Shown here one piece after another: positions 49,375 to 64,000 of a DNA stretch of 64,000 bases. This DNA is from Macrostomum hystrix (Eukaryota; Animalia; Platyhelminthes), in contig CATNEN010000008.1 in the NCBI GenBank assembly GCA_950097015.1, forward strand, positions 3,968,001-4,032,000, read 5' to 3'. Each line of letters begins with the position of its first letter. The first letter of the stretch is position 1. The notes beneath the pieces were generated by a model. It did not search any database. It had not been told where the DNA came from and worked only from the letters and a program-made list of their open reading frames with translations. Both the position numbers and the translations under genes were made by a program.

Positions 49375-50200
49375 AACCGCTCTTGTCCAGGTGAGCTGAG
49401 ACAAGACCTGAGCTGCGGGATGTAGCAGGATGTAGAGGATGAGAAAGTCGGCAGCTGTGCCAACACTTGACTTCCTCAGACGACCCTGGATGACTCGAAG
49501 CAGTCGAATTCACTTGAAGAAGACCATAATTCGGTTACTTTGTGAGATCGTTGTCGCTGCAGTCGACTTCTCAGGATGAACTATTTTAGCTAGGAAACTC
49601 CGCCGTTGCACTTCTCTTCAGCTTCTGACACTTCTGCAGCAGACGCAGTCAATTATGATCGTTACCAAAGACAACTAAGAGTAGAAGGAGGCCCGCTTGA
49701 TCGTTTCGTATCTACTCCTTGAATCCTACTCGATCCTCAGCTGCAGAAGTTCGAGCTTTTAGTTTGTTATTGACGAATTGAAGAACGAAGGCCGTCGTAG
49801 GAATGAGCTGATGCCATAAGGAAAATTCAAGTCCTGAAGAACTGACGGAAGACCGAAGTAAGGGCGAACGGACCAGCTTCAGCGAACAATTACGATATAT
49901 TTGTTAACAATATATTCTGGTCTTCTTCAATCTCGGCTATCAATCAATTAAAAAACGCAGCTTTTTTTCGAATCGAAAAATTTCGACAATTCGCTTTTCT
50001 TTTTTACGTATGGCATAATTATTACCACTTTGAGATAAGAAATACGAACAGACTCTTAACGACTTATTTCAAAATTTAACTTCTGAAAACGCGAGTTTCA
50101 CAGAAAATATTAACATCATACATTCATTTCATTGTTATTTGTACAACTTCGTATATTCTTTACATATACTTCGCACTACATTTGTTTGCGCTTTGCTTAA

Positions 50201-53200
50201 ATGGCTGCCATGGCATCTGCTGTGGTAGAGCAAATGTCTTCATTTTTTAAAGTACATCTTGGAAGTGAAGTTGCTGCTGTTTTTATTTATATAAGTAAAT
50301 ATAGCAAGTCAACATTACCTATGATTGTTCAGCAGTTTAAAGTTTCAAGTGATAAAATTTCATTCTTTCCAGCAGAAAACATGGCAATAGCTTCCACTTT
50401 GAAACTTCTAAAATATTTTGAAAGGGGTAGCCATTCAAATCTATTTGAAACAATGACATCCAATTCTCAGGTTTTTCAAATGGTAAGCAAATTTATCATT
50501 ATATTTTTTGTAATATGTTTGACTCAAAATTGACTTTCAAGCTTAGTGCTGCAATTATACGGTAAGCCTAGCTGGATACAAAAATGATTGTATAAGCAGG
50601 GAAGTAGCTAAAACAAGTTTTTGTAAGTTTTTAAGCTATTGGTATTGCAGTATCTTAAGTGATACTAACATTACATGAGGCATTACACATATGTTATTAA
50701 GTATTGTTATTTGAATATTTAATTAAGTAATAGTTCCATAAAATTTGGCTCATAAAAAACTACAACTATGGGAAAAATAAATTATTTAACACTGCTAATA
50801 GAAAATTACAGTTTATTAATTCCAAAATATTTGATAATGTCAAAATATTTTGCTTTTTTTTCTATGCATAAAGTTTGATATAGGCATAAAAAGATATATT
50901 GTGAGCATAATTGTTTTTTAGAGTAGCTAAGTAGATAACTTCAATAACAAGGTAGCTATTTTAGCAAAGGCATTTGTTTGTAACACGTTGATTCGGTGGC
51001 TTACAATTTAGTGATTGATAACAAAGGGCTTTTGGCCCTATATAAAATAAATTAGCTATTTTTAGAAGACATATTTTTTACAAAGTTATAACATTTATGT
51101 TGTTTAAAATTTAAACTATGATCATTATCTTATTTCTACTTACCAAGTTAGTAACTAGTAGTTAGTAAGGTAAGATAAAAGGAGCAGGAATATCACAAAG
51201 TTATTGTTAAAAGTTTCATTTTACTTTAGAGTCAAATATGAAGCACTTCTCAAATGCTTTTATTTATTTACTGAGACTATGTTTGTGATTTGTGATTCAG
51301 CAACATGTATAGAATGTTTAATGTTCTAAAACATATCTTGAACATAAGTTTACAAAGTAATTAACCTAATTTTCATAAGTTTGGATTTTACAAAGTATTC
51401 ATATTTTTCTGTCATCTGTGTGTATTATAATATATTAATTCATATAGTGCCTTGATATCTGTCAGTAGTATGTTGATATCTGTCAGTGCTATGGACTGTG
51501 AAATGAATCAAACCCGTGTATTGTTCCACAATCCACCCAGGTGCAACAGTGCCTGACATTGTTACTAATGCATGACTTAGTCAGCCTAAGCCGTCGCAGA
51601 GATGGGGCCATTGAGTACTCGATTAATTGGTCCCAAGCTCGAGTCCTCATTCGCGCTCCAGCTTATCTCTGCCTGGTGCGAACCCAACTCGGCCACTCCG
51701 CCGAACTCCTAGTAGAAGAGCTAATCTACAATGGCCGCCTGGGACTGCTGCCTCTCCTAGAAACTGTTGCTAAGCGGCTAGCCGAGGAAGACGACAACAA
51801 TGGCGCGGGTGGCGCGGCATTAAGCGAGGATCCCGGCTTGCGCGCATTGAACGCATTCGCCGATCTTCTAGACCGTCGGTTTGTCACGCGTCGCGGCTCC
51901 GTTGTTCCTCCGCTGCCAACTGCTGATCGTCCCGACGCTGCTCAAGACGATGACGACGATGACGAGTATGACGAAGATCGCGCCGATGGTAGCGGCGTAA
52001 AAATCTATCGCGTTGATAAGCCGTTTGCTCCTTTGAGTCGAGCCGAGAAGGACACTGTTCTCAAGCACCTGCGGAAGACTCTAAAGCTCGGCGCCGACTC
52101 CCTGGAGCCGCCGGCCAAGCGTCCTCGAATAGCGGCCGATGCCGCCACCGCAGCCGAACTAGTTGAAGACACTCGCCGGCCAGACGAAGCTGTTCAGGAA
52201 TTCTCAGTCAATGCTCAACACCTGCGCTATCGATGGCGTGACTCCATGCTGGTCAGGGCGGCCTCCGCGGCCCTTGGCCCGCCCGCCAGCCGGGTTCTAG
52301 CCGCCATGCTAGAGATCATCGACGAACGAGTCCGACTGGGCCACGCCCAATCCCCAGAGTCCGAGATACTGGCCCATGCGGACATTGTTGCTCAGTTGGC
52401 AGCCAGCTCGAATTCCGCTAATCCTGGCGGAAGCGATGCGAGATCCGGGGTTCGTTTCTTTTGTTTTGTTGAACCATGTCAGCGGGAATCAGTGGATATT
52501 ATCAGATCACATTCGTTGTCTTTGTTTCGACACTGAAGATCTTTTTGTGCGAATTAACCAGCAAGCCCAGCAAGTTTCCCCTCCCCATCTCCTCTGTCTT
52601 CTCTTTCTTCTCTTTCAACCCTTTCTGCCCTCTATTCCTTTTATCCCTTTCCACACTCTCATCTTTATCCCTTTATCCCCTCTTTCTCCCCTCTATTCCC
52701 CTTTTCCCTTTATCCCCACTCTCTCCCCTTTAACCCTTTCTCCCCACTCTCGGCCCTTTATCCCTCTCTCCCCTTTATATTTTTCTCCCTTCTCTCCCCT
52801 GTATTTCTTTCTTCCCTCTCTCCCCTATATCCCTTTCTTCCCACTCTCCCCTTTATCCCTTTCTTCCCACTCTCACCTTTATCCCTTTCTTCCCACTCTC
52901 CCCTTTATCCTTTTCTTCCACTCTCCCCTCTATCTCTTTCTTCCCACTCTCCCCTTTATCCCTTTCTTCCCACTCTCCCCTTTATCATTTTCTTCCACTC
53001 TCCACTTTATCTCTTTCTTCCCACTCTCCCCTTTATCCTTTTCTTCCCACTCTCCCCTTATCTCTTTCTTCCCACCCTCCCCTTTATCCCTTTTCCCTCT
53101 ATCTGAAGGCATCTGCCCTGCCTGCTCCCAGCTCTCATCTAATTTGTTGTGTCTGTCTCCAGGTGCAAACTAATCCTTTCAGATGGACCAGCACCTGACC

Positions 53201-54452
53201 GCCCTGTCCGAGGACGGCTTCATCGAGCGTCAGTCGGGAGTGGCCGGCGGTCAGTTTCGCGTGTTGTACAGGCGCGCCATCTTCAGCCTCACAAAACAGT
53301 CGGTAACTGCAATCATTCGTCAGCGCCTCGGCGATAAAGCCGTCCGGGTGTTCAACGCCCTATTTGAGGAGCCGAACCTCACCCAGCAGGAGCTGGAGTC
53401 GCTGACCCTGCTGGCTGGACGGGACTGCAAGGAGCTGCTCTACCGCCTGCTGGTTGACGGCTTCGTTCATTGCGCCGAGCTAAGCAAAGCCGCCGATTTC
53501 ATGAATCCAAGGCCTAACACGGCTTATTTTCTGTTTCACGTGAACTTGGAGCAGGCAACCAGGAAGCTGTTATTGAGTATGCACTCTTATCAGGTGAGAT
53601 TCAGCGCTTTAAAAATAGTAACGAATATCTATAGCCAGATATTGAAAATCTAGAAAATCTGCCTGCTTAGAAGGGTGTTAGAGGGGGTCGGGGGCAGAGC
53701 GGTTAACGCGTTGGCCTCTCGCACCAAGGTCCCTGAGCTCGATTCCGCGGCGAGGCCACATTGGTTCGGGGCGCAGCCGCGGAGAGAAGGCTTGGGGGAT
53801 TGTCGTTCGTTTTACGCCCTTGAAGGCCAACATCCAAGGCACAGCGAGAGTGTACACTGCCTGATGATGAGTAAGTCAGGACAGATGTACACACCTGTGT
53901 GAGCGCGTGCCTGCGTACGGTATCTGTGTGCGTGTGTGCTCAGGAGTCGGCGAAATGGGCAGAATTGTCTCCTTGCTGTCTGCGGGTCTAGTATTAGTGT
54001 CACCAAATGATGTGCCATTGCCCGCAGCCCTCGAACAATTAATAAAAAAGGTTGTTTGAGTGCCTATTAGTCTATCAGACCTAACAGGCTTCAACTAATT
54101 AGATGACGAGTCATTTATCATTGGTTCTTAATTATCCACCTAGGATCACCTGTTAACTCGTCGGTTAGCCCAATCGGCATCGAATCGTCGCCTGTTGGAG
54201 AAGCGTCAGCGAGTGAAGGAGCTGCTGAAGAATCTGGACGCCCAGATACAAGCGGCCGCCGCTGACGCCGAGGTGTCCTCCGAGCTGGCCGAACAGAGAT
54301 CTCAAGCTGCTCAGCTGCTCACACCGCCTGAGCGTGAACAGCTGGAATCTTTGAAGCGAGCTCGCACCGCCCTCAGAGCCGGAGAGCTGCTGCTGGAAGA
54401 GAACATTTTCTTGTTTGAACTGTTTCTCGAGTTTGCCAGCCAGCGATCTTAA
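50201..54452 (+). CDS. POLR3C: RNA polymerase III subunit RPC3 (C82/RPC62 family)
   Basis: Exons 50201-~50341 (donor uncertain), 51541-52449, 53183-53593, 54144-54452 (TAA). Motifs VHLGSEV, CLTLLLMHDLV, ELLVEELIYNG, MDQHLTAL, IIRQRLG..AVRVF, CKELLYRLL..GFV, NRRLLEKRQRV and LLTPPEREQLESLKR follow the RPC3 winged-helix/coiled-coil layout. Confidence 0.9.
52600..53100. repeat. Degenerate polypyrimidine minisatellite (about 25-bp unit) in POLR3C intron 2
   Basis: CTTTCTTCCCACTCTCCCCTTTATC-like units. Confidence 0.88.
53684..54047 (+). mobile_element. SINE family A, copy 5, in POLR3C intron 3
   Basis: Full head, body and tail. Degenerate TSD AAGGGTGTTAGAG (53671-53683) / AAGGTTGTTTGAG (54048-54060). 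Confidence 0.9.
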
Positions 54453-54489
54453 ATCGAAAAACCTATCCACTCTTTCCGAAGCACAAGTA

Positions 54490-54840
54490 TCAATTGGATT
54501 CTCCCGGAAATCCTATTTGGATTCTCCTGGAATTTCTATTTGGATTCTCCCGGAAATTCTATTTGGTTTCTCCAGAAATCCTTTTTTGAGTCTTCAGGAA
54601 ATCCTTTCTGGATTCTCCCGGATATCCCGTTATGATTCTCCCGGAAATCCCGTTTGGATTCTCCCGGAAATCCCGTTTGGATTCTCCCGGAAATCCCGTT
54701 TGGATTCTCCCGGAAATCCCGTTTGGATTCTCCCGGAAATCCCGTTTGGATTCTCCCGGAAATCCCGTTTGGATTCTCCCGGAAATCCCGTTTGGATTCT
54801 CCCGGAAATCCGGTTTGGATTCTCCTGGAAATCCCATTTG
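54490..54840. repeat. 23-bp minisatellite (TTTGGATTCTCCCGGAAATCCCG) downstream of the POLR3C stop
   Basis: Direct reading. Confidence 0.95.
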
Positions 54841-55163
54841 TGTTCTCACCGCCACATCCTTCTTTAAACTATCTAACAAGGCTTTCCTAGAAATCCCACC
54901 AATATTCTCCCGAATTATCCAAATCTTATATTCATATTATTCTTTCATTGTGTTAAAAATAATTTTCTGAAAACTCCATCCATACAGACACGCTGCTTGT
55001 GGAGGTATTTACTGGTGGAAATTTATTTCTTTTCTAGCCTCGATTAGCTATTTCGTTGGTTTTGGTTGCTTACGCTTTTTATATTGTGTTTTTCTCTATA
55101 GAAATTGTACAAATATTGTTCAACATGCATCGCTTGTGTTTTGCAGTTGCTTGCTTACATAAA

Positions 55164-55169
55164 AATAAA
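55164..55169 (+). promoter_or_regulatory. Candidate POLR3C polyadenylation signal AATAAA, about 140 nt upstream of the CHCHD1 acceptor
   Basis: AATAAA followed by U-rich sequence and the acceptor TTTGTTTTCAG ending at 55311. Confidence 0.5.
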
Positions 55170-55359
55170 TAGTTGTAAGCGATGCTTTTTGCGATAGAAT
55201 CTGTGTTTCAGATTGTTTTTTTATATTATAAATTATTAATATTGTTTGCATTGCACAATGCGTAACAATTGCTTTGTTCAGCTGTCATTCTCAATGAAAC
55301 TTTGTTTTCAGATTGTCTCCGCCAACTAGACACCGCTAAAGTACAACAGACAGTTGAAG

Positions 55360-55935
55360 ATGTCTTCGGCCGCTTCCTCCGGCGGCAAGGCAGCTGCCAG
55401 CGTCGGTGGCAAGCTCTTGAAGAAGACAGTCGAGCAGACGCAGGCCTCATCATCGTCAGCGGCTTCTGCGACGCCGTCGTCTAGCGGCGGATTGCACTCG
55501 CTGCCTTCAGCCCTGAACTGGAACGCCGACTTGCTGGCTAAGCGGCGCAGGGAAGAGCTGGCTAAACTGTACCCAGCGGTGTTCCTGCGGCATCCGTCGC
55601 TCAAGAATGTGGTGTCGGGCCGCGGCGAGAAGGGCCTTCGCGCCGTCTGCGTCTCCGAGATGCTCAGCCTTCTAGAGTGCCTTAACGGCGCCGATTATAA
55701 TCAGCGACGCTGCGTCGGCCAGATTGGCACCTTTCAGCGCTGCGTTGAAGTTGAAGAGGCCAAGCGACGGAGGCGCAAGGAGCTGATTAAGAACCCGGAT
55801 CTGGGCCGCAGCGCCGGTGGCCGACTTGCTGCGCCGCAGATCAACGCCCTGCTGGCCCGGTTTCCGACGCCGCCTAGGGCCCCCGGTCAGCCGGATATCA
55901 ATCGGCGAGGTCGACTTGTGAAGCCGGATGACTGA
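55360..55935 (+). CDS. CHCHD1: CHCHD1 / mitochondrial ribosomal protein mS37 (twin CX9C), single coding exon, Ser/Ala-rich N-terminal extension
   Basis: LKNVVSGRGEKGLRAVCVSEMLSLLECLNGADYNQRRCVGQIGTFQRC has two CX9C motifs. It is followed by LGRSAGGRLAAPQINALLARFP, matching the CHCHD1 C-terminal LLxRFP. The ATG is at 55360; the ORF track starts at an upstream TTG. Confidence 0.85.
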   Translation: MSSAASSGGKAAASVGGKLLKKTVEQTQASSSSAASATPSSSGGLHSLPSALNWNADLLAKRRREELAKLYPAVFLRHPSLKNVVSGRGEKGLRAVCVSEMLSLLECLNGADYNQRRCVGQIGTFQRCVEVEEAKRRRRKELIKNPDLGRSAGGRLAAPQINALLARFPTPPRAPGQPDINRRGRLVKPDD

Positions 55936-56379
55936 CTTCAGCTTGGCGTCTAGATTAGAACTAAAATTATTGGCTTAAGACTGGGATTTTAGCCGAGATC
56001 CTGTCTGTATAGCAGTGCTGAAAATTCATAAACAACCATCTATAGCAGGCATCGAGTCTTGCAACTGTTGTCATCAAATAGTTTTTTATTTAGTAATTTT
56101 TTAGCTAGTAGAATGTACGGCTGGTTGATATGTTCATGTTGTTGAATGCAAAGTATACTGTTGCATTATATCCTCGCTTCACACGACTTTCTCCTTTGAA
56201 TTGTGAAGCAAAAAAATTTATTTGCTCTACTTTTTTTAAACATCTTGCTACCTTATTTAAGAGACATTCTTAGTTTGTGACAAGTGGATAGTTTTAGTAG
56301 TGTTTGTTTGATTGAGTGCAGATTGTTAGGAGTTTTAGCCTAGTGGTGAGAGCGTCCGACTCTCTACTTGAAGGTCTCC

Positions 56380-57075
56380 TGGAAATCCAAAAAACCCCGT
56401 ATTGATTCTTCCAGAAATCCCCATTTGGATCCTGCCATAAACTCATTACAGATTCTCCCGGACATCCCGTATGGATTCTCCCGGAAATCTTATTTCTGTC
56501 TGTGCTATGGACTGTAGAACTAATTTAACCCGCAGAATTAAAAAATTTAATTCTTCCGAAAATCCTATTCAGATTTTTCTAGAAATCCTCTTTGGATTCT
56601 GCCAAAAATCCTATTTGTATTCTTTCGGAAATCCCATCTGAATTCTCCCGGAAATCCCATTTGGATTCTCCCGGAAATCCCATTTGAATTCTCCCGGAAA
56701 TCCCATTTGGATCTCCCAGAAATCCCATTTGCATTCTTCCAGATATCCCATTTGGATTCTCCTGAAATCCCATTTGGATTCTCCCGGAAATCCCATTTGG
56801 ATCTCCCAGAAATCCCATTTGCATTCTTCCAGATATCCCATTTGGATTCTCCTGAAATACCATTTGGATTCTCCCAGAAAATCCATTTGCTCTTCCAGAA
56901 ATCCCATTTGCATTTTTTCAGAAATCCTATTTGGATTCTCCCGGAAACCCCATTAGGATTTTCCCGGAAATCCCATTTGCTCTTCAAAAAATCCCATTTG
57001 GATTTTCTCAGAAATCCCTATTTGGATTTTCTTAGAAATCCTGCATGGATTCTCCCAGAAATCTTATTTTAATTC
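56380..57075. repeat. Degenerate array of the same 23-bp family downstream of CHCHD1
   Basis: ATTTGGATTCTCCCGGAAATCCC-type units. Confidence 0.92.
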
Positions 57076-57190
57076 TACCGAAAATCCTACTCTCTTTTCT
57101 CCTCTTTGAATTCTGTTAAATTTATTTTTTCTTTTTCAAAAAGTCCCATGAGTTTGCCAAATGGTCACTTCTCGTTATTTCCTCTTTCAG

Positions 57191-60100
57191 GCAGCCGCAA
57201 TCGTCGATAAAAACAACAGCGGCAGTAGCCTGAAGCTGCGACTTGAACGTCTACTCAAAGCGACTGAGCTGGCGCCAAAGCTGACCGCGAACAATCATGA
57301 AGAAGAGGCCAGTCTATTTAGAAAGTATTATGAAAATATGACAGGCGATTCGACAGTGTTTAGTAAGGCTTCTTTGTGCAAGCTTCAACCATCCAGATTT
57401 AGATTCGGCGCCGAAGTCAAACAGCGCGGCAGCTCTGTGAGTGATTCGACCGCTGCATCGGCGGAGACTCAACTGCTGAAAGAAGCTCGAGCTGCGTTAT
57501 TGCAGCGCAAATCTCGGCAGCTGCTGAACAGCTCGGAGATGCAGGTTAGAAACCTACTTATTTATTCCTCATTCAGAGTAGGAAAGGAGACGTGGTAAAA
57601 TCACGACACACCCCACTTTTCTGCCACCGACACCACACAAACCCTTATTTCTCTGCCACCGACACCCACCCCATTTCTCTGCCACAGACACCAAACCCAC
57701 TTCTCTGCCACCGACACCAACCCCATTTATCTGCCACCGACACGACACCCACCCCATTTCTCTGCCACCGACACCACACCCACCCCATTTCTCTGCCAAC
57801 GACACGACACCCACCCCATTTCGCTGCCACCGACACGATACCAACCCCATTTCTCTGCCACCGACACGATACCAACCCCATTTCGCTGCCACCGACACGA
57901 TACCAACCCCATTTCTCTGCCACCGACACGATACCAACCCCATTTCTCTGCCACCGACACGACGCCAACCTCATTTATCTGCCACCGACACGACACCCAC
58001 CCCATTTCTCCGCCACCGACACCAATCCCGACACGACACGACACCACCCCACTTCCTTGCCACCGTCATCCACCCAATTTGCTTTGGACAAAGGCTTTGG
58101 CCAGATTTTTAGAAACCTGTATGTCGATCACAATTTTTTCTACAGTACACCAACTCTAAACCGCAGGCAATCTGGCACCTCTTGGTGGCTCATCGAACTC
58201 CGCCCGACAATCCAGACGGCGAGCGCCTAATTGACTACGAGGGCTATCAGAAGGTGCGCCAATTGGCCAGTCCGAAGTGCGTTCACCTGCTCTCGCCGAG
58301 ACTATTCTTCAAGCTGCTTCAGGCTGGCGATAGGCCGGATCCGCTGGGTCGCGTTGGCACCGACTCTTTGTACACTTACATTCTGAAGAAGAACTGGCTG
58401 GCCCAGACTCGCATTTACATGTCTCTGTACGACTTCTCAGGCCATGGCTATCTGCGCCGATCTGATTTGGAGAATTACATCACCGACCTGATGCCAACCC
58501 TGCCCCAGCTCAGCCAGTTAGACAAATTGTTTCACGGCTACTATGTGTGCAATGTTGTGCAAAAGATTCTATTCTTTCTTGATCCGCATCGTATTGACCG
58601 AGTGAAAATATGCCACATTTTGACCAGCTCACTGTTAGACGACCTGACGGAGCTGCAGGACAATTCAATGCCCCCTTCTAGAAGCAACTGGTTCAGCGCT
58701 GCTAAGACCCAGTCAGTCTATGGCATGTTTCTCGATCTGGACAAGGACGCCAACGGATTGTTGAGCAAATCTGAGTTTGCAGCCTACGGCGCTGGATCGC
58801 TTACACAGGCCTTTCTTGATCGCCTGTTTCAATCAAGCGTCACCTACGACGGCGAGATGGACTACAAAGCCTTCCTGGACTTTCTCCTGGCCGTGGAGAA
58901 TCGGACTTCTCCGCAGTCGCTGGCTTATTTCTTTCGCATTCTAGATATCGATGACTGCGGGGCCATCACGGCCTGGACCGTCAACTATTTCTATCGCGGC
59001 CTGGAGCACCGACTGCGGCAGCTAGGCGTAGCTGCGCCAACGCTGCGCGACTTCCAGGATGAGATCTTCGACTTGGCTAGGCCTGCTGATCCGTTCAGGT
59101 GCATGAGATTGGTGTCAGTTGTGACTGAGCAGTGTCAGTTGTGACTGAGCAGTGTCAGTTGTGACTGAGCAGTGTCAGATGTGACTGAGCAGTGTCAGTT
59201 GTGACTGAGCAGTGTCAGTTGTGACTGAGCAGTGTCAGATGTGACTGAGCAGTGTGAGTTGTGACTGAGCAGTGTCAGTTGTGACTGAGCAGTGTCAGTT
59301 GTGACTGAGCAGTGTCAGTTGTGACTGAGTAGTGTCAGTTGTGACTGAGTAGTGTCAGTTGTGACAGAGCAGTGTCAGTTGTGACTGAGCAGTGTCAGTT
59401 GTGACAGAAGTGTCAGTTGTGACAGAAGTGTCAGTTGTGACTGAGTAGTGTCAGTTGTGACTGAGTAGTGTCAGTTGTGACTGAGCAGTGTCAGTTGTGA
59501 CTGAGCAGTGTCAGTTGTGACTGAGCAGTGTCAGTTGTGACTGAGTAGTGTCAGTTGTGACTGAGCAGTGTCAGTTGTGACTGAGCAGTGTCAGTTGTGA
59601 CTGAGCAGTGTCAGATGTGACTGAGCAGTGTCAGTTGTGACTGAGCAGTGTCAGTTGTGACTGAGCAGTGTCAGATGTGACTGAGCAGTGTGAGTTGTGA
59701 CTGAGCAGTGTCAGTTGTGACTGAGCAGTGTCAGTTGTGACTGAGCAGTGTCAGTTGTGACTGAGTAGTGTCAGTTGTGACTGAGTAGTGTCAGTTGTGA
59801 CAGAGCAGTGTCAGTTGTGACTGAGCAGTGTCAGTTGTGACAGAAGTGTCAGTTGTGACAGAAGTGTCAGTTGTGACTGAGTAGTGTCAGTTGTGACTGA
59901 GTAGTGTCAGTTGTGACTGAGTAGTGTCAGTTGTGACAGAAGTGTCAGTTGTGACAGAAGTGTCAGTTGTGACAGAAGTGTCAGTTGTGACTGAGTAGTG
60001 TCAGTTGTGACTGAGTAGTGTCAGTTGTGACTGAGCAGTGTCAGTTGTGACTGAGCAGTGTCAGTTGTGATAGATGTGTCAGTTGTGATAGATGTGTCAG

Positions 60101-60445
60101 TTGTGATAGATGTGTCAGTTGTGATAGATGTGTCAGTTGTGATAGATGTGTCAGTTCTGATAGATGTGTCAGTTGTGACTGAGCTGGCATGAGATTGGTG
60201 TCAGATTTGGCTGAGCTGGCATGAGTTCAGAAATAATTTTGTGTCACAAACATTTTAGAATTAAGCTAAGCGATCTGATTGGTTGCGGTCGCGGTGACGT
60301 CATAGTCAGCATTCTAATCGATGCCGGGAGCTTCTGGAAATTCGAGAATCAACCCGCCTGCTTGTCTGAAGAGGAAGAAGGGGCCCCATTAATGGATGGT
60401 GAAGAGGATGTAGATCAGGAAGCTGAGGTGGAGTTTCTGATTTGA
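57191..60445 (+). CDS. PPP2R3C: PP2A regulatory subunit B'' gamma (G5PR); start codon not resolved
   Basis: Exons 57191-57544, 58167-59098, 60259-60445 (TGA). Motifs EEEASLFRKYY, RAALLQRKSRQLL, WLAQTRIYMSLYDFSGHGYLRRSDLENYITDLMPTLPQL, NWFSA, LDLDKDANGLLSK, VTYDGEMDYKAFLDFLLAVENR and DEIFDLARP. Confidence 0.95.
57600..58065. repeat. About 30-bp C-rich minisatellite in PPP2R3C intron 1
   Basis: CCCCATTTCTCTGCCACCGACAC-containing units. Confidence 0.9.
59112..60185. repeat. 20-bp minisatellite (GTCAGTTGTGACTGAGCAGT), about 1.07 kb, in PPP2R3C intron 2
   Basis: Direct reading; contains a 436-bp higher-order duplication. Confidence 0.98.
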
Positions 60446-60789
60446 CATTGAAGAATCGGCGTACTGTGGTATAACATTATCTTTTTGTGCAAGATCAAAA
60501 GGCATTGCTCTCTGCAACCTTTAAAAGTGCATTTCCACTTTGTTTTTTCAAGCTACCTAAATAAGTAATTTTTCAATGGTATTAGATTATTTTATTAACT
60601 ACAATTTTAAATATTACCCGTGTTATGTAGGTGTTTATTGTTTACTATCTGAAGAGGAAATGAACAGGAAAAAGAATAGTAATATCAATTTTAATTGCAG
60701 TTGCATTTTTTGTTGTCTTTGGCTTTTTAAAAGGTTAAAAAAGCTATTATCATGTTTACTATTATATTTTTGCTTTGATTGCTGAATAA

Positions 60790-61866
60790 TACGAGTACAT
60801 AGGTGTCACAGATTCGCTGAAAACTGCAGATATCAAAGAAACAAAACAAAGAACAGCTAATTGTCAACATTGCACTTCTTAACATAGTCACCCCCAAGCT
60901 GCACACATTTGTGCCATCTCTCTGGCAGCTTGCTGATGCCCTGGGCGAAGAATTCGGTGGGGGTCCCTCGTACCCACTGGCTGATGGCCGAGCTGAGTGC
61001 AGAAAGGCTTCCATAGCGATGGCTTCAGTTCTGCCTTCAGGTAGCCACTCGATCAGCAAGATGCCTTCTCTGTCCCAGAACACGGTGGCCATGCGCTTAC
61101 CTGCTGACTGCACCGCCTTGGCCTTGACCGGTGGGGGTTCGTGAGTAGCCTTCCAGACGCTGCTCTGCCGTTTCGTTTCTGGTTCGTAGAAGTGAAACCA
61201 CGTTTCATCACCAGTCACCAGGCGGCCAAGAAAGTCGGGCTCGTTTTGATAGGCGTTGAGTAGGTGGCGGCACATCTGGACCCTCTCTTGCAGTTGGACA
61301 GGAGTCAGCAGTTTAGGGACCCATCGTGCAACAACTCGTGTCATATGCAGATGGTCGGAGATGATGCGATGAATGCTCTTCATTGGTATCTCCAACAAGT
61401 CCTCTAACTGCCTCAGGGTTGCTCCACGATCATCGTCCAGGGCATGCTGCACACGCTGGATGTTGTCACTGGAAGTGGATGACCGCGGTGCACCTGGGCG
61501 TGGAGCATCATCAACTGTTTCCCAGCCGTCCTTAAAGCGCTGCACCCACTTTGACACAGTTTGTTTCGAAGGTGCATCCTCGCTAAAGATTTGCAGCAGC
61601 TCGCGGTAAATATCAGCCTGCTTCTTCTGCTGCTTCCACAACGACCAAATGACAGTGCGCTTGGTAGCTTCACTATTCTCCATACTGGCTAAAAGGGTGG
61701 TTTGAGTCCCACTCGATTTCTGCCGTGTCTCAAAAGCCGGAGGGAAGATTTTCCATAGACAATAAGATCGATGGTGCCTTAGTCTGTATAAAAAAATCTG
61801 CCCTAAAGTACAAAAGAAACAGACGCTATGTAAGTTTGTCAGCGAATTTGCGATTCTTGCAGTAGG
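60790..61866 (-). mobile_element. Internally deleted mariner DNA transposon
   Basis: TA + CGAG terminus at 60790 and a degenerate inverted copy at about 61836-61866 (TCAGCGAAT(C/T)TG(T/C)GA). Contains the transposase remnant. Confidence 0.8.
60857..61683 (-). pseudogene. Mariner transposase with the catalytic core deleted
   Basis: Uninterrupted ATG through the HTH domains, WVPKLL, TGDETWFHFYEPE and ATVFWDREGIL to EGRT. At about 61027 it jumps, out of frame, to the C-terminus HRYGS...EFFAQGISKLPERWHKCVQLGGDYV. The second and third catalytic Asp motifs are missing. Confidence 0.88.
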
Positions 61867-61929
61867 AGACGGGACGTCAAATCAAATGGAGTTATTGATC
61901 TAGAATCTTTAATCAAGGAACACAAAAGC

Positions 61930-62300
61930 GGGGGTTGATTGGCAGAGCGGTTAACGCATTTGCCTCTCGCACCAAGGTCCCTGAGCTCGATTCCGCGGTG
62001 AGACCACATTGGTTCGGGGCGCAGCCGCGGAGAGAAGGCTTGGGGGCTTGTCATGAAACTTACGCCCTTAAGAGCCAACCTCCAAGGCGAGTGAGAGTGT
62101 ACACTGCCTGACGATGAGTAAGTCAGGACAGATGTACACACCTGTGTGAGCGCGTGCCTGCGTACGGTATCTGTGTGCGTGTGTGCTCAGGAGTCAGCGA
62201 AACGGGGCAGAATTGCCTTCTCGCTAGCTGAGGATCCAATAGTAGTGTCACCAAATGATGTGCCATTGCCCGCAGCCCTCGAAATTAACAATTAGCAATT
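61930..62300 (+). mobile_element. SINE family A, copy 6
   Basis: Colinear with copy 5 over about 360 bp; no clear TSD. Confidence 0.9.
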
Positions 62301-62332
62301 AACCTGCAATAACGTTCACCAGCAAGCCAATA

Positions 62333-63035
62333 TTTTCTAAACTGAAGTTGCTAGAAAGGCCTGTTTAATAGGCGATTTAGTTGGCGTTGGATTGACACTT
62401 AAGCAACAGGTGCCGGGTGTCCTCAGTGGCGTCAGGCTCGAGCCAATTGGAGCCGAGTATCAGCGAGTGGCCGTTGCGGAGCCGGGCAAGCAGGACTGCT
62501 CTGCTGCTTGTCGGCGCGGCTGCTGACGTTGTTCTGGCGTGGGCCTGTTCTAGCGCCGCGTTGGGTGGCGCTGTGTCGGCGCACGCCTCATAGTCCCTGC
62601 TCTCAGTGGCTCTCAGAGGTCTCAGGTAGCTAAATCTACGTAGATAAACTCAATTTAGTGGGTTTTAAAATTTAAATGTTGCTTAATTTCGAATTTTTTC
62701 TAAACTGAAGTTGCTAGAAAGGCCTGTTTAATAGGCGATTTAGTTGGCGTTGGATTGACACTTGAGCAACAGGTGCCGGGTGTCCTCAGTGGCGTCAGGC
62801 TCGAGCCAATTGGAGCCGAGTATCAGCGAGTGGCCGTTGCGGAGCCGGGCAAGCAGGACTGCTGCTTGTCGGCGCGGCTGCTGACGTTGTTCTGTCGTGG
62901 GCCTGTGCTAGCGCCGCGTTGGGTGGCGCTGTGTCGGCGCACGCCTCATTGGCTCTCAGAGGTCTCAGGTAGCTAAATCTACGCAGATAAACTCAATTTA
63001 GTGGGTTATAAAATTTAAATGTTGCTTAATATCGA
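62333..63035. repeat. Tandem duplication (period 363 bp) carrying a decayed LINE 3' fragment on the minus strand
   Basis: Units start at 62333 and 62696. The minus strand reads AVLLARLRNGHSLILG...EDTRHLLLKC, like the LxRLRTGH...ETxxHxLxxC motif of RNase H-bearing LINE clades. Confidence 0.8.
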
Positions 63036-64000
63036 AAATTCTTTAAATTTAAAGTGCAGCTTTTGATTGGTTAAGCTAAGCTGAGATTTAATACTGACTG
63101 GAACTACCATTATCAGCTTGATAAATATCGAAAACTTCCTTAACGGTTGCAACAATTTCAATGTCATGATCAAACAACCGAGTATTAGAATCCGTGCTAA
63201 ACCTGTCAGCTAATGCGTTGACGGAATTGCCATCACCTTTGTGCAATTTAAAGTCGCTTGTAGAGCTAAATATAGCAACCAATCAGATTTCGGCACTGCC
63301 TAGCGAGATTTCTGGCCTGACCAAGTGAGTGTCTGACAACAAATGAGGATCCAGGAAAAGGATAGGGTGGAGAGTGGGGTGGCTTTTGGAGTGGGGTAGT
63401 TGCAAATGTACGTTTTAACAGTAGAAAGATCACGCTATTCTCCCCTGAGGAAAGACAACGGAGTGTTTCAAATACCTCATGATACCTATTGCCTACTTCA
63501 TGATAGCTCCCAAACTAAATGACCGATTTTCGTGAAAGTCCACCATCTGAATCAAAATTTTCCGCCCTTAACGTTGGGCTAACTTTCAAAGCCGTACGAG
63601 CCAGCATCATCGAGATATTCAGCGATTCGTGTCGAAGACGCTGGTGACAAGGACAACTAACATTGATTTGTATAAACCTCTTTGGCACCCACTTTTACCA
63701 CCCGACACCACCACAAGAATCGTTGAATATCTGGACGATGCCGATGTTTTGGTTGATTAGTTGAATGTTTTGGAAGATACAGAAAAAATTTAATGTGTCT
63801 TTCTAATACCCATTTGGTCTTTCTACTGTTAAGGCTTTCTGTCTACACTTAACTTTGCCACTCGAATCTATACGAGCGTATATTCTATCATCGTTTGTGT
63901 TGCCTCGCACTTCCTAAAGCTTGCGCCAAACAAAGTCACGGTACAACACTTAGCTAAATCTTATTTTAGGATTTAAATTTGCCATAGACATGCGGATGCT

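What the first reader, a model, noticed from the sequence alone, without database searches (positions are those of the whole stretch)
57161..57340. PPP2R3C may borrow its start codon from a trans-spliced leader ending in AUG
Seen: a strong acceptor (CTTCTCGTTATTTCCTCTTTCAG, ending 57190) is followed in phase 0 by an open frame GCA GCC GCA ATC... (AAAIVDKNNSGSSLKLRLERLL...EEEASLFRKYY). The first in-frame ATG inside this exon is 57338. It lies after the conserved EExxLFxKYY segment and after an out-of-frame ATG at 57297. No upstream ATG exon was found between CHCHD1 and this acceptor. Established: flatworm spliced leaders end in AUG, and that AUG can act as initiator Met. Inference: SL addition gives M-A-A-A-I-V-D-K..., a full-length protein of about 490 aa. 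At the CHCHD1 and SERP1 acceptors, which have their own ATG, an SL AUG would hit a stop within 1-5 codons. Caveat: an in-frame ATG at 57161, inside the pyrimidine tract, could be used if this AG is not spliced.
Basis: partly seen in the sequence, partly recalled or inferred. Interest (0 to 1): 0.8.

Follow-up and report, generated by a model that had tools for sequence, protein, structure and literature searches.

The report
Spliced leader supplies PPP2R3C start codon
In this Macrostomum flatworm, one copy of the phosphatase-regulator gene PPP2R3C has no start codon of its own, and RNA assemblies show the AUG-ending spliced leader joined in frame directly in front of its first codon; this is a well-supported new example of a mechanism already known from schistosomes.

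Summary
A TTTCAG acceptor ends at 57190, and a frame opens at 57191 that has no in-frame ATG until 57338. The genome matches the published Macrostomum hystrix assembly in size and contig count. It carries at least 23 exact copies of the 35-nt Macrostomum spliced leader, which ends in ATG followed by GTAAG. Contigs from three runs of one study read ...GCGAAGACTCAATTTATTGCATG joined directly to 57191, then jump from 57544 to 58167. No contig lies upstream of 57190. The leader's AUG is therefore the first AUG of the mature mRNA and is in frame with a 491-aa PPP2R3C protein. Seven residues that are invariant from vertebrates to flatworms lie before the first internal Met (codon 50). The M. lignano orthologue has the same layout: a TTTCAG acceptor in frame, no genomic ATG, and proteins deposited as "partial". 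A second, more conserved paralogue keeps its own ATG. That translation starts at the leader AUG is inferred, not shown. The mechanism is known (Cheng et al. 2006), and this scan has already noted it for other genes of this genome, including a followed-up CHMP6 case. Verdict: real, well supported, and a new member of a known kind.

The parts
57161..57163 (+). In-frame ATG inside the outron's pyrimidine tract. It is removed by trans-splicing and is absent from the mature mRNA seen here.
   Evidence: Searches give the sequence. One search shows no contig depth upstream of 57190. The M. lignano orthologue has no equivalent ATG.
57168..57190 (+). Trans-splice acceptor: pyrimidine tract plus TTTCAG.
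   Evidence: It matches the [T/C]TNCAG motif reported for Macrostomum trans-splice acceptors (PMC8629364). The leader-bearing contigs join here.
57191..57544 (+). Exon 1: 118 codons, phase 0 at both ends, and no initiator codon of its own before codon 50.
   Evidence: Contigs of X3, X4 and X5 cover 57190-57545 with no differences.
57297..57341 (+). Out-of-frame 14-codon ORF. It holds the first AUG a ribosome would meet if it skipped the leader AUG, and it overlaps the internal in-frame ATG.
57338..57340 (+). First in-frame genomic ATG in the mature mRNA (codon 50). It lies after the conserved LKxxL and EExxLFxxY motifs.
57545..58166 (+). Intron 1 (GT...AG), which contains a 31-bp tandem repeat at 57602-58022.
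   Evidence: the loose end after 57545 reads CAATCTGGCACC..., which matches 58168 onward. One search shows the repeat and the splice dinucleotides.
58167..59098 (+). Exon 2, the EF-hand core of PPP2R3C.
   Evidence: Pfam EF-hand_13, EF-hand_7 and EF-hand_6. There are 612 homologues with E <= 1e-10, most of them named PP2A B'' gamma. The 3' boundary is inferred from the frame and a GT donor.
59099..60258 (+). Intron 2 (GT...AG, inferred), filled by a 20-bp repeat of about 55 copies at 59112-60184.
60259..60445 (+). Exon 3 coding part, ending in a TGA stop at 60443-60445.
   Evidence: The C-terminal segment IKLSDLIGCGRGDVIVSILIDAGSFWKFEN resembles the corresponding segment of the homologues printed (compared by eye, not formally aligned).
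55360..55935 (+). Upstream same-strand neighbour, a twin-CX9C (CHCHD1-like) ORF with its own ATG. It sets the 1255-nt gap in which no ATG-bearing exon is used.
   Evidence: Pfam gave no hit, so its identity is not confirmed here.

Best explanation
The locus is a three-exon gene for a PP2A B''-gamma (PPP2R3C) paralogue in a Macrostomum flatworm whose assembly statistics match M. hystrix. Its primary transcript is trans-spliced at the TTTCAG acceptor ending at 57190. The 35-nt spliced leader, which ends in AUG, is joined directly to GCA GCC GCA. The leader's AUG becomes the 5'-most AUG of the mRNA, about 32 nt from the cap. It is in frame with the whole conserved reading frame, so the protein starts M-A-A-A-I-V-D-K and is 491 aa long.

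Shown: the leader gene, the leader-exon 1 junction, the exon 1-exon 2 junction, the frame, the conserved N-terminus, and the same genomic layout in M. lignano.

Inferred: that ribosomes start at the leader AUG, and that the exon 2-exon 3 junction is as modelled.
For:: the genome holds at least 23 exact copies of the published Macrostomum leader (sequence from PMC8629364), including arrays with an 11.6-kb period.

in the gene, the leader is followed by GTAAG.

one contig in each of X3, X4 and X5 carries GCGAAGACTCAATTTATTGCAT, then the G at 57190, then 57191-57544 with no differences, then CAATCTGGCACC (exon 2 from 58167). No depth lies upstream of 57190. Holding 0.66 of the sampled words fits exon-only content.

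the frame is open from the junction for 490 codons. The leader has a single ATG at its 3' end. The next AUGs downstream (57297, 57330) are out of frame.

K15, L18, E38, E39, L42, F43 and Y47 are invariant across 8 animal and flatworm sequences, and all precede Met50.

the M. lignano orthologues are deposited as 'partial'. P0121 begins TLLSSYTDCSSLKLRL, immediately after ...ccaatttcAG. There is an in-frame stop 45 nt upstream and no genomic in-frame ATG before codon 21, so the leader AUG is in frame there too.

use of the flatworm leader AUG as initiator is established (Cheng et al. 2006, as cited there); the M. hystrix genome paper itself calls the leader's final ATG a translation start codon.
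Against: There is no direct evidence of translation: no ribosome footprints and no N-terminal peptide.

The RNA evidence is assembled contigs from three runs of a single study, whose library type is not on record. Contigs drop rare isoforms, so a minor unspliced transcript starting at ATG 57161 cannot be excluded.

The leader AUG has U at position -3, which is a weak context by the standard Kozak rule (my own knowledge, not a tool result). This is only partly offset by G at +4.

The species name rests on matching assembly statistics, not on a label.
Confidence: 0.87

Rival explanations
1. A fraction of transcripts is not trans-spliced, and translation starts at the genomic in-frame ATG at 57161. 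This gives the same protein with the N-terminal extension MVTSRYFLFQ.
For: The ATG at 57161 is in frame, and no stop lies between it and 57191. Contigs cannot exclude rare isoforms (the tool's own caveat).
Against: None of the three RNA runs has any contig upstream of 57190. The ATG lies inside the pyrimidine tract that is removed with the outron. The M. lignano orthologue has no in-frame ATG between its upstream stop and the acceptor, so the feature is not conserved. An out-of-frame ATG at 57148 lies upstream of it.
Confidence: 0.05
2. The leader AUG is skipped and translation starts at the first internal in-frame AUG (57338, Met50). This gives a 442-aa N-terminally shortened protein, as in the UniProt-style models of the M. 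lignano orthologue that begin at an internal Met.
For: The leader AUG has U at -3. Database models of the M. lignano orthologue start at an internal Met (P0123).
Against: Scanning ribosomes would first meet two out-of-frame AUGs at 57297 and 57330, and the first of these ORFs overlaps 57338. Seven invariant N-terminal residues, including the LKxxL and EExxLFxxY motifs, would be lost. In other animals the start Met lies at or before the LK motif. The internal-Met models arise from gene callers that require an ATG.
Confidence: 0.06
3. A cis-spliced upstream exon that was not found supplies the ATG in the main isoform, and the leader-bearing form is a minor one.
For: The 1255-nt gap after the CHCHD1-like ORF is repeat-rich and could hide a short exon.
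Against: The only assembled form in three runs carries the leader directly at 57191, and no other joint or loose end was reported at 57190. The M. lignano annotation also starts the transcript at the equivalent acceptor.
Confidence: 0.02

Closest known systems
[quoted passage not shown]
   Same: A flatworm leader ending in AUG is trans-spliced in frame to an ORF that has no AUG of its own, and so supplies the start codon. [quoted passage not shown]
   Different: The host is a free-living macrostomorph and the gene is PPP2R3C. Translation from the leader AUG was tested experimentally in the schistosome work but not here.
slORFs, open reading frames created by spliced-leader addition (slORFfinder, PMC9851317)
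   Same: It is the same concept: the leader provides the start codon of the translated frame.
   Different: Those cases were found with ribosome footprints in nematodes, Oikopleura and trypanosomes, many of them using non-AUG codons or shifted frames. Here a canonical AUG opens the conserved main frame.
Other genes of this same genome noted by this scan as lacking a genomic start codon (CHMP6, s1-408126, followed up; also NDUFA5, SFMBT, DPH7, NSA2, HYI, NUDT12-like, ECD)
   Same: The same genome, the same leader, and the same proposed mechanism.
   Different: A different gene. Here there is also evidence from an orthologue in a second species, and a contrast with a paralogue that keeps its own ATG. 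I did not re-test those notes.
The second PPP2R3C paralogue of the same genome (G000:C25, about 4990370-4993040, minus strand; 90-96% identical to M. lignano P0002)
   Same: It belongs to the same protein family. Its first exon also opens just after a TTGCAG acceptor.
   Different: It has its own ATG 2 nt after the acceptor, and a leader AUG would be out of frame there (a 13-codon overlapping ORF). Whether it is trans-spliced was not tested.

Membership tests
Flatworm mRNA whose initiator AUG is donated by the spliced leader (Cheng et al. 2006 type) | The organism has an SL RNA whose leader exon ends in AUG, directly followed by a GU donor. | tested here: met
   There are at least 23 exact 35-nt copies plus variants, and none for the reversed control pattern. 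The gene reads ...TTGCATG|GTAAG.
Flatworm mRNA whose initiator AUG is donated by the spliced leader (Cheng et al. 2006 type) | The leader is joined to this particular mRNA at the proposed acceptor. | tested here: met
   Contigs of X3, X4 and X5 carry 21-22 leader letters, then the G at 57190, then exon 1. This is one study, and the data are contigs rather than raw reads.
Flatworm mRNA whose initiator AUG is donated by the spliced leader (Cheng et al. 2006 type) | The leader AUG is in frame with the conserved ORF, with no stop between them. | tested here: met
   ATG|GCA GCC GCA runs open for 490 codons to the TGA at 60443.
Flatworm mRNA whose initiator AUG is donated by the spliced leader (Cheng et al. 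2006 type) | The mature mRNA has no other in-frame AUG upstream of the conserved N-terminal residues. | tested here: met
   The first in-frame AUG is codon 50, and the invariant residues K15 to Y47 precede it.
Flatworm mRNA whose initiator AUG is donated by the spliced leader (Cheng et al. 2006 type) | Ribosomes actually initiate at the leader AUG. | not testable with these tools
   No ribosome-profiling or proteomic data were available.
PPP2R3C / PP2A regulatory subunit B'' gamma | An EF-hand core of the B'' family (EF-hand_13 plus an EF-hand pair). | tested here: met
   In exon 2, PF17958 scores 28.6 bits (cut-off 22.6), PF13499 30.1 (30) and PF13405 27.2 (25).
PPP2R3C / PP2A regulatory subunit B'' gamma | The closest relatives across animals are named B'' gamma and align over the full core. 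| tested here: met
   Among the 120 best hits listed, query coverage is 99-100% and identity 48-68%, with E from 1e-92 to 1e-130. Most of the named hits are called B'' subunit gamma.
PPP2R3C / PP2A regulatory subunit B'' gamma | The N-terminal LKxxL and EExxLFxxY motifs and the KLREE-RA-FLQRK segment are conserved. | tested here: met
   Alignment A1 has 17 invariant columns in exon 1.
Downstream gene of an SL-resolved operon (with the CHCHD1-like gene) | A same-strand upstream gene lies within 1 kb after subtracting repeats (the M. lignano criterion of PMC8629364). | tested here: inconclusive
   The distance from stop to acceptor is 1255 nt, or about 741 nt after removing the 514-bp tandem repeat. 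No polycistronic RNA was examined. In M. lignano the orthologue instead has a divergently oriented neighbour.

The most novel reading that the evidence does not exclude
After PPP2R3C duplicated in the Macrostomum lineage, the faster-evolving copy lost its genomic start codon once, before M. hystrix and M. lignano split. It has since been maintained as an obligately trans-splicing-dependent gene, while the conserved copy kept its own ATG with the leader AUG out of frame. On this reading, dependence on the leader AUG is a stable, heritable gene feature that ties this paralogue's translation to trans-splicing, rather than a sporadic accident of annotation.
Probability: 0.45. Interest if true: 0.4.

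Novelty: new member of a known kind. Interest (0 to 1): 0.3.

Why it matters
It gives a documented case, at the RNA-junction level and in two species, that Macrostomum genes can lack a genomic start codon and take it from the spliced leader.

This has a practical consequence for annotation. Gene callers that require an ATG either truncate such proteins or flag them as incomplete. The M. lignano orthologue shows both outcomes: UniProt-style models start at an internal Met and lose conserved motifs, and the NCBI entries are marked "partial".

It also matters for transgene and knock-in design in these model flatworms. Altering the acceptor or its phase would remove the start codon.

It does not change the understanding of the mechanism, which has been known since 2006.

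Tried and rejected
- I first placed the start of exon 2 at 58146 (ctacAG). The RNA contigs put it at 58167, so that model was dropped.

- I first took the genome for M. lignano because its leader matches exactly. This was rejected because the best M. lignano protein is only 68% identical, and the assembly size, contig count and N50 equal those published for M. hystrix.

- The leader was not found in the window itself, as expected for a trans-acting RNA.

- The M. lignano locus L007 (P0001) seemed at first to start 9 nt after the acceptor, with nearby AGs out of frame. The sister copy L015 (P0121) resolved this: its annotated start lies exactly at the TTTCAG acceptor and is in frame. P0001 and P0122 are simply 5'-shorter models.

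- Run X1 (a second study, organism A) gave only one 184-nt contig inside exon 1 and says nothing about the 5' end.

- Pfam did not confirm that the upstream ORF is CHCHD1. ARAGORN found no tRNA in 50000-64000.

- The exons were searched separately by reference, and a script computed only lengths and phases. The joined step was left out.

The exon 2-exon 3 junction and the CHCHD1 and SERP1 acceptors therefore remain unverified by RNA.

Full report
**Observation.**
- A pyrimidine tract ending in TTTCAG stops at 57190.
- GCA GCC GCA ATC opens at 57191 and reads AAAIVDKNNSGSSLKLRLERLL...EEEASLFRKYY.
- An in-frame ATG lies at 57161 inside the tract, bounded upstream by an in-frame TGA at 57149.
- Out-of-frame ATGs lie at 57297 and 57330.
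- The first in-frame ATG of the exon is at 57338, codon 50.

The two side claims also hold at the sequence level. A leader ATG at the CHCHD1-like acceptor would read five codons and then TAG. At the SERP1-like acceptor it would read one codon and then TAG.

**Which organism, and does it have an AUG-ending leader?** The 35-nt Macrostomum lignano leader, taken from PMC8629364, occurs at least 23 times exactly in the window's genome. The reversed control pattern gives no match. Some copies sit in arrays with an 11.6-kb period on contigs C15, C17 and C42. In the gene, the leader is followed by GTAAG.

The genome has 220,453,370 bases in 42 contigs, and contig C7 is 13,505,968 bases long. These are exactly the total length, contig number and N50 published for the M. 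hystrix assembly (PMC10468722). I therefore take the host to be M. hystrix. This is an inference from matching numbers, not from a label. That paper states that the Macrostomum leaders are highly conserved, and that the final ATG is likely a translation start codon.

**RNA evidence.** The run search returned four runs of one study that hold 0.66 of the sampled words of 57100-59100. That is almost exactly the exonic share of the stretch.

I laid three of them, plus one run of a second study, on the repeat-free stretch 57064-57601.
- Each of X3, X4 and X5 gave one contig of 1516-1671 nt covering 57190-57545 with no differences.
- The loose end before 57190 reads GCGAAGACTCAATTTATTGCAT. Together with the G at 57190, this is the 3' part of the leader.
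- The loose end after 57545 reads CAATCTGGCACC..., which is the sequence from 58168 onward.

The G at each boundary is shared between the two sides of the joint. The junctions are therefore leader...ATG|GCA at 57191, and 57544|58167 with GT and AG intron ends. An acceptor at the next AG (57194) does not fit the contig sequence.

There is no contig depth upstream of 57190, and no other joint or loose end at that position. The presence of a leader and a removed intron shows that these runs are cDNA, although their library type is not on record.

**Gene model.**

| Part | Coordinates | Size |
|---|---|---|
| Exon 1 | 57191-57544 | 118 codons |
| Exon 2 | 58167-59098 | 932 nt |
| Exon 3 (coding) | 60259-60445 | TGA stop at 60443-60445 |

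The total is 490 codons plus the leader Met, giving 491 aa. The exon 2-exon 3 junction is inferred from frame and GT/AG ends. It is consistent with the contig lengths.

Exon 2 carries EF-hand_13, EF-hand_7 and EF-hand_6. It finds 612 homologues with E <= 1e-10. The 120 best hits listed cover 99-100% of the query, and most of the named ones are called PP2A regulatory subunit B'' gamma.

**Is the N-terminus real coding sequence?** I aligned exon 1 with the N-termini of two M. lignano paralogues, the second M. hystrix paralogue, and four other homologues from the search. Two of these are named, an oyster and a vertebrate sequence; the other two carry no source name. The alignment gives 17 invariant columns. 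Seven of them (K15, L18, E38, E39, L42, F43, Y47) precede Met50.

In the four other homologues, the initiator Met lies at or up to 12 residues before the LK motif. A start at 57338 would therefore remove conserved sequence. It would also be preceded by two out-of-frame AUGs, and the first of these opens a 14-codon ORF that overlaps 57338. The leader has a single ATG at its very end, so it is the first AUG of the mRNA.

**Orthologue test.** The best hit, at 68% identity, is an M. lignano protein deposited as "partial". Its 90% cluster holds four versions.
- One begins TLLSSYTDCSSLKLRL.
- Two begin further in.
- One UniProt-style model begins at an internal Met and lacks the LK motif.

At the locus of the longest version, the annotated start follows ...ccaatttcAG directly. 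The frame has a TAA 45 nt upstream and no in-frame ATG until codon 21. A leader AUG there would read M-T-L-L-S-S-Y in frame. The absence of a genomic start codon behind an in-frame trans-splice-type acceptor is thus shared by two Macrostomum species. The ATG at 57161 is not shared.

Both acceptors fit the [T/C]TNCAG motif reported for Macrostomum trans-splice sites.

**Paralogue contrast.** The genome has a second PPP2R3C copy on C25, which is 90-96% identical to the other M. lignano paralogue over its last two exons and 73% over its first. Its first exon opens after cattgcAG, with its own ATG 2 nt later. A leader AUG there would be out of frame. Whether that copy is trans-spliced was not tested.

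**Comparison with what is known.** That all reported flatworm leaders end in AUG, and that this AUG can serve as the initiator, was established for Schistosoma mansoni by Cheng et al. 2006. PMC9851317 summarises that work: 28% of trans-spliced transcripts are in frame, and more than 40 cDNAs need the leader AUG. PMC12582326 makes the same point.

A search for Macrostomum papers on the topic found only the passing remark in the M. hystrix genome paper. This scan has already noted the same pattern for at least eight other genes of this genome, and one of them, CHMP6, was followed up and confirmed. I did not re-test those notes.

**Verdict.** Initiation at the leader AUG remains an inference from mRNA structure, conservation and precedent. 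This is a new, well-documented member of a known kind. Its main value is for annotation and for designing constructs in Macrostomum, and interest is modest.

Noticed in passing
L005:1838-2000 (minus strand), next to the SL RNA gene at L005:1501-1535 (minus strand); G000 contigs C15, C17, C42: A full-length U1 snRNA gene (Rfam RF00003, 151.7 bits) lies about 300 nt from the SL RNA gene, inside a unit that repeats every 11.6 kb. The leader and U1 genes therefore appear to be co-amplified in one tandem array.
   Followed up: partly
G000, many contigs (list): Besides the exact copies there are about 26 scattered leader copies with 1-2 mismatches. Several end in ATA or otherwise lose the ATG. They may be decayed SL genes or retrocopies of trans-spliced mRNAs.
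   Followed up: no
G000:C25, about 4990370-4993040 (minus strand); L012:1501-1827 (minus strand) is its exon 1: This is a second, more conserved PPP2R3C paralogue, 90-96% identical to M. lignano P0002 over most of its length. It has its own ATG 2 nt after a TTGCAG acceptor. A leader AUG would open a 13-codon out-of-frame ORF across the true start.
   Followed up: partly
L007, L015 (M. lignano GCA_002269645.1 contigs NIVC01000632.1 and NIVC01000665.1): In M. lignano the orthologue's upstream neighbour is a divergently oriented RIMBP2-like gene about 1.2 kb away, not a CHCHD1-like gene. The proposed POLR3C-CHCHD1-PPP2R3C operon context is therefore not conserved.
   Followed up: partly
P0123, P0125 (UniRef A0A1I8I2S0, A0A1I8HDG0) against the NCBI 'partial' entries P0001, P0121, P0122, P0002, P0124: Public M. 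lignano models of both paralogues are either flagged as 5'-partial or cut back to an internal Met. This looks like a systematic annotation artefact of leader-donated or leader-adjacent start codons.
   Followed up: partly
window 56550-57063 and 54494-54847; 57602-58022; 59112-60184: There are three families of tandem repeats around and inside the gene. A 23-bp unit occurs in both intergenic regions flanking the CHCHD1-like ORF. A 31-bp unit of about 14 copies fills much of intron 1. A 20-bp unit of about 55 copies fills most of intron 2.
   Followed up: no
window 60880-61686 (minus strand): An open frame shows Mos1/mariner transposase features (HTH_48, HTH_32 and a partial DDE Transposase_1 domain) just downstream of the PPP2R3C 3' end. 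It looks truncated.
   Followed up: partly
window 61921-62230 and 53675-54020: A repeated element of about 300 nt has a tRNA-like start (gggggttgattggcagagcggttaacgc...). It occurs on both sides of the gene pair. ARAGORN calls no tRNA there, so it may be a tRNA-derived SINE.
   Followed up: partly
window 62330-62640 and 62695-62975: Two direct copies of a segment of about 300 nt (ctaaactgaagttgctagaaaggcctgtttaatagg...) lie 365 nt apart. They were not examined further.
   Followed up: no
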